Virus record (IMG/VR): IMGVR_UViG_3300042923_000569
Coordinates: 1 to 64,000 of that record
Strand: one strand, 5' to 3'
Length of the DNA: 64,000 nt
Shown here: positions 5,111 to 43,363 of the stretch, piece by piece
How the letters are laid out: each line of letters starts with the position of its first letter
How positions within the stretch are numbered: position 1 is the first letter of the stretch
Position numbers and translations under genes: made by a program
Notes under the pieces: model-generated
Told to the model about the DNA's origin: nothing
Databases searched by the model: none
The model's input: the letters and a program-made list of their open reading frames with translations, nothing else

Positions 5111-7276
<2,166 letters not shown>

Positions 7277-39412: not shown

Positions 39413-41122
<1,710 letters not shown>

Positions 41123-41150
41123 CTAGTTTACCCATGCGGGTTTTCTAGAC

Positions 41151-41156
41151 TATTTA
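41151..41156 (-). promoter_or_regulatory. Late-type TAAATA for terL
   Basis: CTAAATA 40 nt before ATG. Confidence 0.5.
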
Positions 41157-41179
41157 GCAATTAAAAAAGTAAAAATTAG

Positions 41180-41695
41180 TTACGATGATCTAACAGTTAC
41201 AACTCTGTTATACATAAATGCATGATTTTTAGGTATTTCATAATTATCAACAAAAATATATTCAAAATTCCTTCCACGTAATCCATTTTCTACATCTTGA
41301 ATAAAATAAATCTTAGAATTATTAGAGAAAGTGAATGTATTTGAGGTACGTTGTTCAAGAGTAATAAATCTTTGGTCTTCTGGTAGACGTTCTTGGAATT
41401 TATCAAATAATTCATTAATAATATCAAAATTATATCTAAAGATACTATATGACTTTCCACAAAGTGCCACATTAATATTTTTATTGAATAAAACTGTCCA
41501 TAATGCAGCTATCATAATTGTTGTTGTAGTTCCATCACCACGATTTGTAATAATTTCGTAATGGTCTGAATGATCCATATTAATAATATGGTTCATATCA
41601 TTCATTTGATGTTCTCTAAGACATATTTCTAGATATTCTTCTATAAAATAGAAAATAGTTTGTCTACAAATTTCATATTCTAATGCATAATTCAT
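41180..41695 (-). CDS. Truncated, degenerate terminase-ATPase paralog (pseudo-ATPase)
   Basis: Colinear with TerL N-domain: YFIE, HQ, NRGDGTTT, LW..LFN, FSNNSKI, LRG, IFVDNY. Confidence 0.75.
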   Translation of the reverse strand: MNYALEYEICRQTIFYFIEEYLEICLREHQMNDMNHIINMDHSDHYEIITNRGDGTTTTIMIAALWTVLFNKNINVALCGKSYSIFRYNFDIINELFDKFQERLPEDQRFITLEQRTSNTFTFSNNSKIYFIQDVENGLRGRNFEYIFVDNYEIPKNHAFMYNRVVTVRSS

Positions 41696-41705
41696 AATCT
41701 TCCTT

Positions 41706-41730
41706 AAAAAGTACCGTCAAGTGACGGTAC
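41706..41730 (-). terminator. Terminator before the pseudo-terminase gene
   Basis: GTACCGTCA/TGACGGTAC plus T5. Confidence 0.65.
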
Positions 41731-41739
41731 ATAGTACTA

Positions 41740-42239
41740 TTAAATCTGTTTTTGTGTATATGTTAGGTCCATATAAGTCTTAAATGGTCCATATAGTGCT
41801 TCAGTATTGTTTCGTTCGTTGTAAATATCGATACTTAGAGTTAAACGAGGAAGATATGTTCCATTTTCACTACGAACCAACCACCAGCCAGGATAAAAAC
41901 GCTTTTTAGAGCGTGTACTTTTCCTGAAAGTACCGATACCTAATGGATCATCATATAAAATATCAATAATAGTGTCTGTATCATTAATCGGATAGTCGCC
42001 TAATGCTTTTGATGCATTGGTCGAATCAGTCACTACAATTTCTGCATATGTGAATGTTTCATTAAGTAATTCTTCAAGTTCTGAAATAGTTTTGAATTTC
42101 AATATTCCAGTACTGGTAAAGAACTCTAAACCTGTACGTTCGGTAGTACCTTCATCATAATTAACTAGAATACCCATCTTTTCACCAGTATTAGTTTCAA
42201 CAATAAATGAATATTCAGTTAGTACTTTAAGAATTGCCA

Positions 42240-42240
<1 letters not shown>
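41740..42240 (-). CDS. Conserved hypothetical protein
   Basis: TAATG-coupled to rnh; KS..Y.PGW, YGPFKT. Confidence 0.65.
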
Positions 42241-43286
<1,046 letters not shown>

Positions 43287-43363
43287 GAAAACAAATAAAT
43301 AATTGCATATAAACACTTTACATCATTTTTTATTCGTTATTAATACCAACGAAATGAAAATGA

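What the first reader, a model, noticed from the sequence alone, without database searches (positions are those of the whole stretch)
41180..41695. Catalytically dead terminase-ATPase paralog directly upstream of terL
It aligns end to end with the TerL N-domain: [34 protein letters not shown]; EYQ/EHQ; Walker [17 protein letters not shown] (K to T); LWYAMFN/LWTVLFN; FENKSRI/FSNNSKI; ARG/LRG; Walker B LYLDEF/IFVDNY (E to N). The nuclease domain is absent. Both catalytic residues are lost while the ORF stays intact. It lies upstream of the terL late promoter at the end of the rnh (TGAAAC) unit, so it may be made before terminase. Established: Avs STAND NTPases detect large-terminase ATPase domains. 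Inference: a decoy/sponge for terminase-sensing immunity, or a packaging-motor regulator (no small terminase is seen in the window).
Basis: partly seen in the sequence, partly recalled or inferred. Interest (0 to 1): 0.82.

Follow-up and report, generated by a model that had tools for sequence, protein, structure and literature searches.

The report
Dead terminase-ATPase paralog beside terL
A jumbo-phage gene next to the DNA-packaging enzyme encodes a well-folded copy of that enzyme's ATPase core without its catalytic residues; the gene family is widespread and fast-evolving, was previously noted only as a 'truncated terminase', and has no tested function.

Summary
Window 41180-41695 (-) is a 171-aa ORF with a strong, conserved ribosome-binding site.

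- **Homology:** it matches the TerL ATPase domain by BLASTP, Pfam, PHROG and an AlphaFold2/Foldseek comparison with T4 gp17.
- **Dead motifs:** the Walker A Lys is Thr and the catalytic Glu is Asn. There is no lid subdomain and no nuclease domain.
- **Known gene:** the window is a Rak2/GAP32/CBB-type jumbo phage. Published genome papers already note a 'truncated large terminase' upstream of terL as a hallmark of this group, and at least 65 database genomes match it at the same locus.

New here:
- All 14 alleles examined lack both catalytic residues.
- The gene evolves about 10-30 times faster than TerL. It is still under purifying selection (dN/dS 0.15-0.43, against 0.01-0.08 for its neighbours).
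- About 30 further clusters of dead short TerL-like proteins exist in metagenomes. They often sit in terminase modules that also encode a recognisable TerS.

Function is untested. My best guess is a non-catalytic binding partner or regulator of TerL (about 0.35). A terminator-like hairpin lies upstream of the ORF, which contradicts the claim that it ends the rnh unit.

The parts
41180..41695 (-). 171-aa catalytically dead TerL-ATPase-core paralog (short form; phrog_5989 family)
   Evidence: ORF list. BLASTP to own TerL E=2e-5. Pfam Terminase_6N above cut-off. phrog_5989 E=6.5e-19. AF2 pLDDT 88.6. Foldseek to T4 gp17 ATPase TMq 0.78.
41522..41545 (-). Degenerate Walker A (residues 51-58, NRGDGTTT): P-loop Arg52 and Gly55 kept, Lys replaced by Thr56
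   Evidence: Alignments A1, A2 and A7. Profile alignment to T4 gp17 SRQLGKT. Lys absent in all 14 alleles examined and in 31 of 42 short hits.
41243..41260 (-). Degenerate Walker B (residues 146-151, YIFVDN): Asp150 kept, catalytic Glu replaced by Asn151
   Evidence: Every dead paralog aligned has N, D, S, Q or C here. P0023 still reads D-E at Walker B although its Walker A Lys is lost. All 8 full-length TerL hits that align cleanly keep D-E.
41273..41278 (-). Arg140-Gly141, ten residues before the Walker B Asp, at the position of the P74-26 trans-acting arginine finger
   Evidence: At least 90% conserved in A7 and invariant in A1/A2. Position between alpha2 and beta3 as described for P74-26 R139 and T4 (PMC5727402). 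Lost in Rak2 (LYG) and several metagenomic members.
41606..41611 (-). His29-Gln30, aligned with the adenine-binding Q motif (T4 gp17 Q143)
41699..41705 (-). Shine-Dalgarno AAGGAAG, 3 nt before the ATG
   Evidence: Sequence. Invariant AAGGAAGA in 9 relatives.
41706..41730 (-). Terminator-like hairpin (8-bp GC-rich stem, 4-nt loop) followed by TTTTT, between the upstream 166-aa ORF and this gene
   Evidence: Terminator scan. Fold -13.1 kcal/mol, z=-2.95. Conserved with compensatory stem changes in relatives.
41117..41179 (-). 63-nt spacer to terL. It holds a late-promoter-like GCTAAATAGTCTAGAAA (41142-41158), a small hairpin (41130-41141) and the terL Shine-Dalgarno ACTAGAGGA (41119-41127).
   Evidence: Sequence and motif scan. 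The same cassette occurs in the other short-form genomes L019 and Yen9-04. CBB late-promoter consensus is ATAAATA (PMC5259590). Long-form relatives overlap or abut terL instead (-47 to +1 nt).
39413..41116 (-). Catalytically intact large terminase TerL. The ATG at 41110 is the likely start, and the TTG at 41116 is the longest ORF.
   Evidence: Pfam Terminase_6N/6C and phrog_36964 E=2e-261. Walker A ARQMGKTT and Walker B LYLDEF. 565-aa gene call in sibling contig L009.
41740..42240 (-). Conserved 166-aa ORF of unknown function immediately upstream. It is context only and not shown to be part of the system.
   Evidence: phrog_15898 E=3e-85. dN/dS about 0.05. AF2 pLDDT 82 with no PDB fold match, so not TerS-like.

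Best explanation
SHOWN: the gene encodes a stably folded, standalone copy of the core (Rossmann/ASCE) subdomain of the large-terminase ATPase. It cannot hydrolyse ATP, because the Walker A lysine and the catalytic glutamate are both gone. It belongs to an old family (phrog_5989, the 'truncated terminase' of Rak2-like jumbo phages). The family is kept as an open, translated gene in every relative examined. It is under purifying but strongly relaxed selection. It usually sits inside the terminase gene module.

INFERRED mechanism: it acts by binding, not catalysis, as a non-catalytic accessory subunit or regulator of the packaging terminase. It would dock on the TerL ATPase domain through the same subunit-subunit surface that TerL protomers use in the pentameric ring. 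Most alleles keep the P-loop arginine, the Walker B aspartate and the arginine at the trans-finger position. Docking could hold TerL in check before the motor assembles on the portal, nucleate motor assembly, or tune ATPase or nuclease activity. The analogy is with dead paralogs in other ring ATPases, such as the clamp-loader delta-prime subunit (analogy from general knowledge, not tested here). In long-form relatives it is probably translationally coupled to TerL, because the genes overlap or abut (-47 to +1 nt). In this window the coupling is broken by a 63-nt spacer that carries a late-promoter-like element.
For: - **Fold and dead motifs:**
- **Selection:** dN/dS is 0.15-0.43 with every 95% upper bound at or below 0.65. 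Neighbours give 0.01-0.08.
- **Retention:** the ORF is intact in all 14 alleles examined, from five genera whose TerLs diverged to 65% identity. tblastn matches at least 65 database genomes, and wherever flanks were inspected the match lay directly upstream of terL.
- **Module linkage outside the Rak2 clade:**
  - L014: TerS, dead paralog, TerL.
  - L017: gp15, dead paralog, TerS, TerL, gp18.
  - L012: dead paralog, a 61-aa ORF, TerS, TerL.
  - L013: dead paralog, TerL.
  - L010: TerL, dead paralog.

- **Gene coupling in long forms:** the terL Shine-Dalgarno lies inside the paralog's conserved C-terminal GCTRG codons.
- **Residue pattern:** conserved polar residues cluster at the former active site and at the trans-arginine position (PMC5727402).
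- **Core-gene behaviour:** strict positional retention across a whole phage clade is typical of a core-module gene, not of an accessory gene.
Against: - No interaction, expression or phenotype data exist.
- The protein evolves about 10-30 times faster than the nearly invariant TerL it is supposed to bind (57% against 97% identity for GAP32-CBB; tree path 2.8 against about 0.1).
- Among close strains of the window phage, the listed variants in this gene are 5 nonsynonymous to 1 synonymous. The neighbours give 5 to 29 (Fisher p=0.002).
- The putative arginine finger and even the P-loop Gly and Walker B Asp are lost in some alleles (Rak2, L022).
- Three of eight sampled metagenomic members are not near any TerL.
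- The lid subdomain is dispensable, since short forms arose repeatedly.
Confidence: 0.35

Rival explanations
1. Immune decoy or blocker. The dead TerL mimic occupies the sensor pocket of terminase-sensing defence proteins (Avs1-3, Upx). It would either fail to trigger their oligomerisation or shield nascent TerL.
For: - Very fast amino-acid evolution and an excess of nonsynonymous polymorphism, as in conflict genes.
- The fold matches the TerL ATPase domain seen in the Avs3 complex 8dgc_E (TMq 0.69).
- Avs2 and Upx need only the ATPase domain. Another TerL-ATPase-like protein, T4 vs.8, does enter the Avs2 pocket, and its authors suggest such proteins may be anti-defence factors (PMC13601566).
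- Placement beside terL in the terminase module would allow co-expression with it, giving the right timing (inferred from position; no expression data).
- Some family members lie in early or accessory regions.
Against: - Binding normally activates Avs, and vs.8 is toxic with Avs2 rather than protective.
- Avs3 and Avs2 read the active-site residues, the bound ATP and its Mg shell. These are the features lost here, so the protein may simply be invisible to them.
- Anti-defence genes are usually patchy, yet this one was found at the same locus in every Rak2-like genome examined.
- No experimental data.
Confidence: 0.2
2. Small-terminase substitute or specificity subunit. Rak2-like phages lack a recognisable gp16. 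The paralog occupies the gene slot just upstream of terL, and these phages have defined long terminal repeats, so it could provide DNA-end recognition or TerL activation.
For: - T4 core gene 16 is reported missing from Rak2 (PMC3622015).
- No TerS hit among the four ORFs of this locus that were scanned.
- It occupies the TerS-like position.
- Rapid divergence resembles that of TerS proteins (general knowledge).
- The upstream 166-aa ORF is not TerS-like.
Against: - In L012, L014 and L017 the dead paralog coexists with a recognisable TerS.
- It has no DNA-binding or oligomerisation fold typical of TerS.
- The pI is near neutral to acidic in the Rak2-like alleles, 5.2 for the window protein.
- A TerS may lie elsewhere in the roughly 350-kb genome, outside the window.
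Confidence: 0.1
3. Decaying duplicate whose protein is unimportant. The ORF is kept open mainly as an upstream cistron that sets terL translation, or it is drifting towards loss in the short-form lineages.
For: - dN/dS is 4-10 times higher than in the neighbours.
- 5:1 nonsynonymous to synonymous variants among close strains.
- C-terminal truncations recur (window/L019, Yen9-04, P0003).
- Active-site remnants are eroding in L022 and Rak2.
- The terL ribosome-binding site is embedded in the 3' end of long forms.
Against: - dN/dS is significantly below 1 in every pair, including window against L019 (0.39, CI 0.22-0.65).
- A 171-codon frame stays open in an AT-rich genome after dN of about 0.6-0.8.
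- The AF2 fold is confident and is shared at TM 0.92-0.93 with alleles only 26-30% identical.
- In the window the coupling architecture is gone, yet the ORF and its strong Shine-Dalgarno persist.
- The family persists in unrelated phages, sometimes far from terL.
Confidence: 0.1
4. Inter-phage weapon. It would be a dominant-negative 'poison' subunit that caps or blocks the terminase rings of co-infecting phages or satellites while sparing the phage's own TerL.
For: Fast evolution and allele diversity between otherwise near-identical genomes. Dead subunits of ring ATPases are classic dominant negatives (general knowledge).
Against: Purely speculative. There is no sign of specificity determinants. 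Its own TerL is the closest available target.
Confidence: 0.05

Closest known systems
'Truncated large terminase' of Rak2-like jumbo phages (CBB_274, GAP32_268, BF_0272, pEa 'terminase-like protein'; phrog_5989)
   Same: Same locus (rnh, 166-aa ORF, paralog, terL), same PHROG and same fold (BFVD CBB_274 TM 0.92, Yen9-04 g267 TM 0.93). It also has the same loss of the Walker A Lys and the catalytic Glu. The literature notes it as a hallmark of the group (PMC5259590, PMC7760394).
   Different: Only 23-35% identical to any Rak2-like allele aligned pairwise, although the flanks are 84-93% identical. The window allele is a short form (171 aa) without the lid subdomain. It is separated from terL by a promoter-like spacer instead of overlapping it. 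The papers do not mention the dead motifs, the evolutionary rate or any function.
Large terminase TerL (T4 gp17 type) ATPase domain
   Same: Same ASCE fold and same motif order: Q motif, P-loop with Arg, arginine before Walker B, Walker B Asp, C-motif strand.
   Different: No Walker A Lys, no catalytic Glu, no lid subdomain and no RNase-H-like nuclease domain. Amino-acid evolution is about 10-30 times faster.
T4 vs.8 (phrog_1488), a standalone TerL-ATPase-like protein that activates Avs2 (PMC13601566)
   Same: A small standalone phage protein with a TerL-ATPase-like fold and unknown function.
   Different: A separate family: different PHROG, hhalign probability only 24%. vs.8 keeps GKS and DE. 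It lies in an early-gene region next to denV, not by terL.
Small terminase TerS (T4 gp16 and others)
   Same: Gene position directly upstream of terL. Fast sequence divergence.
   Different: Unrelated fold, with no TerS profile hit. It coexists with real TerS genes in other phages.
Non-catalytic paralogous subunits of ring ATPases (for example clamp-loader delta-prime, F1 alpha); analogy from general knowledge
   Same: A dead paralog of the working ATPase that keeps an arginine at the trans-finger position.
   Different: No evidence here that it joins a ring. Its conservation is much weaker than in those subunits.

Membership tests
Large terminase (TerL) | TerL-type ASCE ATPase fold | tested here: met
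   AF2 pLDDT 88.6. Foldseek to T4 gp17 ATPase TMq 0.78, E=1e-9. Pfam Terminase_6N above cut-off.
Large terminase (TerL) | Walker A G-K-[ST] lysine | tested here: not met
   G-T-T at residues 55-57, and T56 aligns with T4 K166.
Large terminase (TerL) | Walker B Asp followed by the catalytic Glu | tested here: not met
   D150-N151 aligns with T4 D255-E256.
Large terminase (TerL) | C-terminal RNase-H-like nuclease domain | tested here: not met
   The protein ends at residue 171 and has no Terminase_6C hit.
Rak2-like 'truncated terminase' / phrog_5989 | Best profile match to phrog_5989 | tested here: met
   E=6.5e-19. All eight sampled metagenomic relatives also hit it best.
Rak2-like 'truncated terminase' / phrog_5989 | Locus rnh, conserved 166-aa ORF, paralog, terL | tested here: met
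Rak2-like 'truncated terminase' / phrog_5989 | Walker A Lys and catalytic Glu both absent | tested here: met
   All 14 alleles examined. 31 of 42 short hits in the exhaustive search.
Rak2-like 'truncated terminase' / phrog_5989 | Full ATPase domain including the lid (229-239 aa), overlapping or abutting terL | tested here: not met
   The window allele is 171 aa with a 63-nt spacer. Short forms also occur in L019, Yen9-04, P0003 and others, so this is a variant within the family.
Small terminase (TerS) | Sequence or profile similarity to a TerS family | tested here: not met
   No TerS hit in Pfam or PHROGs at E up to 1.
Small terminase (TerS) | It is the only small partner gene in the terminase module | tested here: not met
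   In L012, L014 and L017 a TerS (phrog_445 or phrog_735) coexists with the dead paralog.
T4 vs.8 family (phrog_1488) | Profile similarity and intact Walker motifs | tested here: not met
   hhalign probability 24%. vs.8 keeps GKS and DE and belongs to a different PHROG.
Anti-Avs/Upx decoy (hypothetical class) | Binds a terminase sensor and prevents its activation | not testable with these tools
   Needs co-expression or binding assays. Only fold similarity to the TerL in 8dgc is available.

The most novel reading that the evidence does not exclude
The phrog_5989 proteins would be a widespread class of terminase mimics. Phages would co-express them with TerL to neutralise terminase-sensing immunity (Avs1-3, Upx). 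They would occupy the sensor pocket without supplying the ATP and active-site contacts needed to trigger it. This would be a viral pseudoenzyme decoy aimed at a pattern-recognition receptor.
Probability: 0.2. Interest if true: 0.85.

Novelty: new member of a known kind. Interest (0 to 1): 0.55.

Why it matters
- **Annotation:** databases annotate these proteins as 'terminase large subunit'. That is wrong in a functional sense and can corrupt TerL-based phylogenies and packaging-type predictions.
- **Biology:** a dead ATPase paralog is kept for a very long time in the packaging module of jumbo and T4-like phages. Either viral packaging motors have an unrecognised non-catalytic component, or phages deploy terminase look-alikes in conflicts with terminase-sensing immunity. 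Recent work on T4 vs.8 and Avs2/Upx makes the second question directly testable.
- **Test systems:** cultivable relatives (CBB, GAP32, 121Q, Rak2) can serve for either question.

Tried and rejected
1. **Word-indexed homologue search** with the window protein found only a 99%-identical sibling.
2. **The search for related loci** with alignment A2 failed because no stretch was conserved enough.
I did not resend them to the structure-prediction, representative-search or homologue-search tools and used only window or session-fetched proteins there. A2 did go to the solved-structure (PDB) sequence search, which accepted it.
4. **phmmer of the single protein against PDB** found nothing. The family profile was needed.
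5. **RNA evidence:** no run shown to be RNA holds the locus, so expression and timing could not be tested.
6. **Is the upstream 166-aa ORF the missing TerS?**
   - There was no family hit.
   - The AF2 model is a two-domain beta-rich protein with no PDB match.
   - The idea is rejected as far as these tools can see.
7. **Recent independent duplications of each phage's own TerL:**
   - In the tree, dead paralogs do not pair with their cognate TerLs, except possibly P0019.
   - A single old origin is not excluded, but resolution is poor.
8. **Orthology with T4 vs.8:** rejected.
9. **DNA binding inferred from charge:** pI is not conserved and is acidic in the window protein.
10. **Cassette replacement by recombination as the main cause of divergence:** paralog dS is only modestly above that of the flanks and the excess is mostly in dN. 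In-place fast evolution is therefore sufficient, although exchange is not excluded.
Full report
**1. What is there**

Window 41180-41695 (minus strand) is a 171-aa ORF. A Shine-Dalgarno AAGGAAG lies 3 nt before its ATG. Sixty-three bases downstream starts a 565/567-aa large terminase at 39413-41110/41116. This TerL has an intact Walker A (ARQMGKTT) and Walker B (LYLDEF), and it matches Terminase_6N, Terminase_6C and phrog_36964 (E=2e-261).

The small ORF is homologous to the TerL ATPase domain by every test used:
- BLASTP against its own TerL: 23% identity over 158 residues, E=2e-5.
- Pfam Terminase_6N: 25.2 bits, above the cut-off of 22.
- phrog_5989: E=6.5e-19.
- A profile of the paralog family hits the T4 gp17 ATPase domain in the PDB at E=2e-16.
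  - Its best structural matches are T4 gp17 ATPase (TMq 0.78, E=1e-9).
  - The TerL ATPase domains of P74-26, T7, PhiV-1 (in the Avs3 complex), D6E, HK97 and Sf6 follow.

The alignment to T4 gp17 fixes the motif equivalences:

| Window ORF | T4 gp17 | Role |
|---|---|---|
| Q30 | Q143 | adenine-binding Q motif |
| R52 | R162 | P-loop arginine |
| G55 | G165 | P-loop glycine |
| T56 | K166 | Walker A lysine, lost |
| D150 | D255 | Walker B aspartate |
| N151 | E256 | catalytic glutamate, lost |

The protein stops at the C-motif strand, so it lacks the lid subdomain as well as the nuclease domain.

**2. Whose genome, and is the gene known?**

The flanks match Pectobacterium phage CBB, Cronobacter phage GAP32 and their relatives (Mimasvirus, Eneladusvirus) at 82-84% nucleotide identity. 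The match skips the ORF itself.

All relatives carry a positional counterpart between a conserved 166-aa ORF and terL. It is annotated 'terminase large subunit', 'terminase-like protein' or 'hypothetical protein'. tblastn with two alleles finds it in 18 plus 47 database genomes, spanning Mimasvirus, Eneladusvirus, Asteriusvirus, Alcyoneusvirus and unclassified relatives.

[quoted passage not shown] Neither paper mentions the catalytic residues, the evolutionary rate or a function. My literature searches found nothing further.

The gene is therefore a new, very divergent allele of a known but uncharacterised kind.

**3. Family-wide anatomy**

In 14 alleles examined from five genera, the Walker A lysine is always replaced (T, L, S, V, I or N). 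The residue after the Walker B acid is never Glu; it is N, D, S or C.

Most alleles are 229-239 aa and cover the whole ATPase domain including the lid. Short forms of 171-185 aa, ending at or just after the C-motif strand, occur in the window, in its nearest relative L019 (176 aa once the start is corrected), in Yen9-04 and in P0003.

The most conserved polar residues are the P-loop Arg and Gly, the Walker B Asp, and an Arg-Gly pair ten residues before that Asp. That arginine lies between alpha2 and beta3. This is the position of the biochemically confirmed trans-acting arginine finger R139 of P74-26 TerL, where T4 also has an arginine (PMC5727402).

These remnants are not universal:
- Rak2 has Tyr at the arginine position.
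- L022 has lost the P-loop Gly and carries Glu in place of the Walker B Asp.
- Several metagenomic members have K, E, C, H or Y at the arginine position.

**4. Evolution**

Amino-acid identity between GAP32 and CBB, by gene:

| Gene | Identity |
|---|---|
| dead paralog | 57% |
| TerL | 97% |
| 166-aa ORF | 93% |
| RNase H (rnh) | 95% |
| downstream structural protein | 96% |

The window allele is only 23-35% identical to the 13 other alleles aligned pairwise. In a maximum-likelihood tree the window-to-GAP32 path is 2.8 substitutions per site for the paralog. The TerL terminal branches are about 0.05 each, so the corresponding TerL path is about 0.1.

Nei-Gojobori dN/dS with codon bootstrap:

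| Pair | Paralog dN/dS (95% CI) |
|---|---|
| XbC2-Kaldavass (dS 0.46, unsaturated) | 0.15 (0.09-0.25) |
| GAP32-CBB | 0.22 |
| BF-Yen9-04 | 0.32 |
| window-L019 | 0.39 (0.22-0.65) |
| L022-GAP32 / L022-CBB | 0.41 / 0.43 |
| neighbouring genes, all pairs | 0.01-0.08 |

The protein is therefore under purifying selection, relaxed about 4-10-fold. Synonymous divergence is only modestly above that of the flanks, so fast change in place is a sufficient explanation.

Among four close strains recovered from public runs, the best-supported variants split as follows:

| Gene | Nonsynonymous : synonymous |
|---|---|
| dead paralog | 5 : 1 (four of the five in codons 31-38) |
| TerL | 0 : 10 |
| 166-aa ORF | 4 : 14 |
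| rnh | 1 : 5 |

Fisher's exact test gives p=0.002. One caveat applies: only the best-supported 40 of 339 differences were listed, and the data are contigs, not reads.

The tree does not pair dead paralogs with their own TerLs. One old origin is not ruled out, but the branches are poorly resolved.

**5. A much wider family**

An exhaustive phmmer search of 1.84 billion representative proteins returned 51 hits.
- Of the 42 short hits (157-297 aa), 31 lack the Walker A lysine. Nearly all of those also lack the catalytic Glu.
- Eight of the nine full-length TerL hits keep G-K-[ST] and D-E. The ninth, P0038, aligns poorly at Walker A.
- All eight sampled dead members hit phrog_5989 best.
- The ESM Atlas lists dozens of clusters of 166-206-aa Terminase_6N proteins from viruses, some of which may be fragments.

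Contexts of the eight sampled divergent members:

| Member | Locus | Gene order or context |
|---|---|---|
| P0045 | L014 | TerS (phrog_445, E=6e-8), dead paralog, TerL |
| P0024 | L017 | T4-like: gp14, gp15, dead paralog, TerS (phrog_735, E=6e-4), TerL, gp18 |
| P0030 | L012 | dead paralog, a 61-aa ORF, TerS (phrog_445, E=1e-10), intein-containing TerL |
| P0022 | L013 | dead paralog, TerL, then gp32 and RecA |
| P0019 | L010 | TerL, then the dead paralog immediately downstream |
| P0015 | L015 | T4-like replication-gene region; no TerL within 4 kb |
| P0051 | L016 | glycosyltransferase/NUDIX region; no TerL within 4 kb |
| P0007 | L018 | block of small ORFs; no TerL within 4 kb |

The family is therefore usually, but not always, part of the terminase module. 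It coexists with TerS, so it is not simply a TerS replacement.

In Rak2-like phages no gp16 homologue has been found (PMC3622015). I tested whether the conserved 166-aa ORF upstream could be one. It has no family annotation. Its AF2 model, two beta-rich domains with pLDDT 82, matches nothing in the PDB.

**6. Expression signals**

Between the 166-aa ORF and the paralog lies an 8-bp GC-rich hairpin followed by TTTTT and then the Shine-Dalgarno sequence (41706-41730).
- The terminator scan reports it.
- It folds at -13.1 kcal/mol with z=-2.95.
- It is conserved in nine relatives with compensatory stem changes, for example CCGTCA/TGACGG, CTGC/GCAG and CTAC/GTAG.

This argues that the rnh unit, which has a sigma-70-like promoter at 43258-43287, ends before the paralog.

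In long-form genomes the paralog overlaps or abuts terL (from a 47-nt overlap to a 1-nt gap). The terL Shine-Dalgarno ACTAGAGGA is encoded in the paralog's conserved C-terminal GCTRG. This suggests translational coupling.

In the short-form genomes (window, L019, Yen9-04) the 3' part is replaced by a spacer. It carries GCTAAATAGTCTAGAAA, a small hairpin and the same Shine-Dalgarno. CTAAATA resembles the ATAAATA late-promoter consensus proposed for CBB. CTAAATAG occurs only three times in the window.

What transcribes the paralog in this window is unknown. No run shown to be RNA holds the locus.

**7. How it most likely works**

Shown: it is a folded, translated, selected, catalytically dead TerL-ATPase core, usually encoded in the terminase module.

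Inferred: it works by binding. I favour a non-catalytic partner or regulator of TerL that uses the ring-type subunit interface (confidence about 0.35). The reasons are:
- The locus is strictly retained across a whole clade.
- The gene recurs in TerS-TerL modules of unrelated phages.
- The gene arrangement suggests coupling to terL.
- Conserved polar residues sit at the former active site and the trans-arginine position.

The main objection is the very fast evolution beside an almost invariant TerL, together with the erosion of those residues in some alleles.

Fast evolution and an excess of nonsynonymous polymorphism fit a conflict gene. A 2026 study shows that another standalone TerL-ATPase-like protein, T4 vs.8, enters the Avs2 pocket, and it speculates that such proteins are anti-defence factors (PMC13601566). 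Three points weigh against the idea:
- vs.8 triggers Avs2 rather than blocking it.
- vs.8 is a different family with intact motifs.
- Avs3 and Avs2 read the active-site residues and the bound ATP, which this protein lacks. Loss of these features could equally be a way of not being sensed.

Lesser rivals are a TerS-like specificity subunit (0.1), a decaying duplicate with only a cis role (0.1) and an inter-phage poison subunit (0.05).

**8. Verdict**

The object is a new, short and highly divergent member of a known but uncharacterised family. The recognition that the whole family is catalytically dead, fast-evolving, widespread and usually embedded in TerS-TerL modules appears to be new within the literature I could search. 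Function remains untested, and the decisive experiments are ordinary ones (see next steps). Interest is moderate, at 0.55.

Noticed in passing
window 41706-41730 (-): Terminator-like hairpin plus T5 directly upstream of the paralog's ribosome-binding site. It is conserved in nine relatives with compensatory stem changes. It may end the rnh-hyp transcript, or it may act as a 5' stabiliser of a late transcript. In CBB, XbC2 and Kaldavass, a TATAAATG late-like motif overlaps the upstream stop codon.
   Followed up: partly
window 41117-41179 (-); also L019:4572-4644 and L004 (Yen9-04) 5557-5640: Only the short-form genomes have a spacer between the paralog and terL. All three share the 17-nt string GCTAAATAGTCTAGAAA, followed by a hairpin and the terL Shine-Dalgarno. 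The genomes belong to different genera, which hints at exchange of this cassette or at a conserved late promoter exposed by the deletion.
   Followed up: partly
window 41740-42240 (-): A 166-aa ORF (phrog_15898) is very conserved (dN/dS about 0.05) and belongs to a large phage-only family. Its AF2 model has two beta-rich domains and no PDB match. Nineteen of the 45 differences between the window and its 99.5%-identical sibling L009 fall in this gene, which suggests a recombination patch.
   Followed up: partly
window 41108-41116 (-): The longest terL ORF starts at the TTG at 41116. The ATG two codons later (41110) has the better spacing to the Shine-Dalgarno and is the start called in the sibling contig (565 aa). 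The window and L019 TerLs have about 15 extra acidic N-terminal residues compared with GAP32 and CBB.
   Followed up: no
L012:5401-7983: A metagenomic phage TerL of 860 aa carries LAGLIDADG/Hom_end hits, indicating an intein. Its module also contains a dead paralog and a TerS. The CBB paper reports inteins in the Rak2 and K64-1 TerLs.
   Followed up: no
L025:8254-8913 (T4 vs.8): T4 vs.8 (219 aa, phrog_1488) is a second, independent family of standalone TerL-ATPase-like proteins. Its GKS and DE motifs are intact, and it lies next to denV.
   Followed up: partly
one search list: P0016, P0032, P0034, P0035, P0039, P0044 and others: Eleven short hits (178-297 aa) keep the Walker A Lys, and most of those also keep the catalytic Glu. 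They may be contig-end fragments, split TerLs or active standalone ATPase domains. Their contexts were not examined.
   Followed up: no
window 41072-41137: One low-depth contig in run X10 skips 66 nt spanning the terL start and its ribosome-binding site. It probably comes from a related phage with the shorter TerL N-terminus.
   Followed up: no
long-form loci L001-L003, L006-L008, L022, L026-L028: In every long-form genome checked, the distance from the paralog's stop to the terL start is congruent to 1 modulo 3 (values +1, -11, -14, -17, -23, -47). terL is therefore always in the same frame relative to the paralog. This is probably inherited architecture. No slippery site was sought.
   Followed up: no
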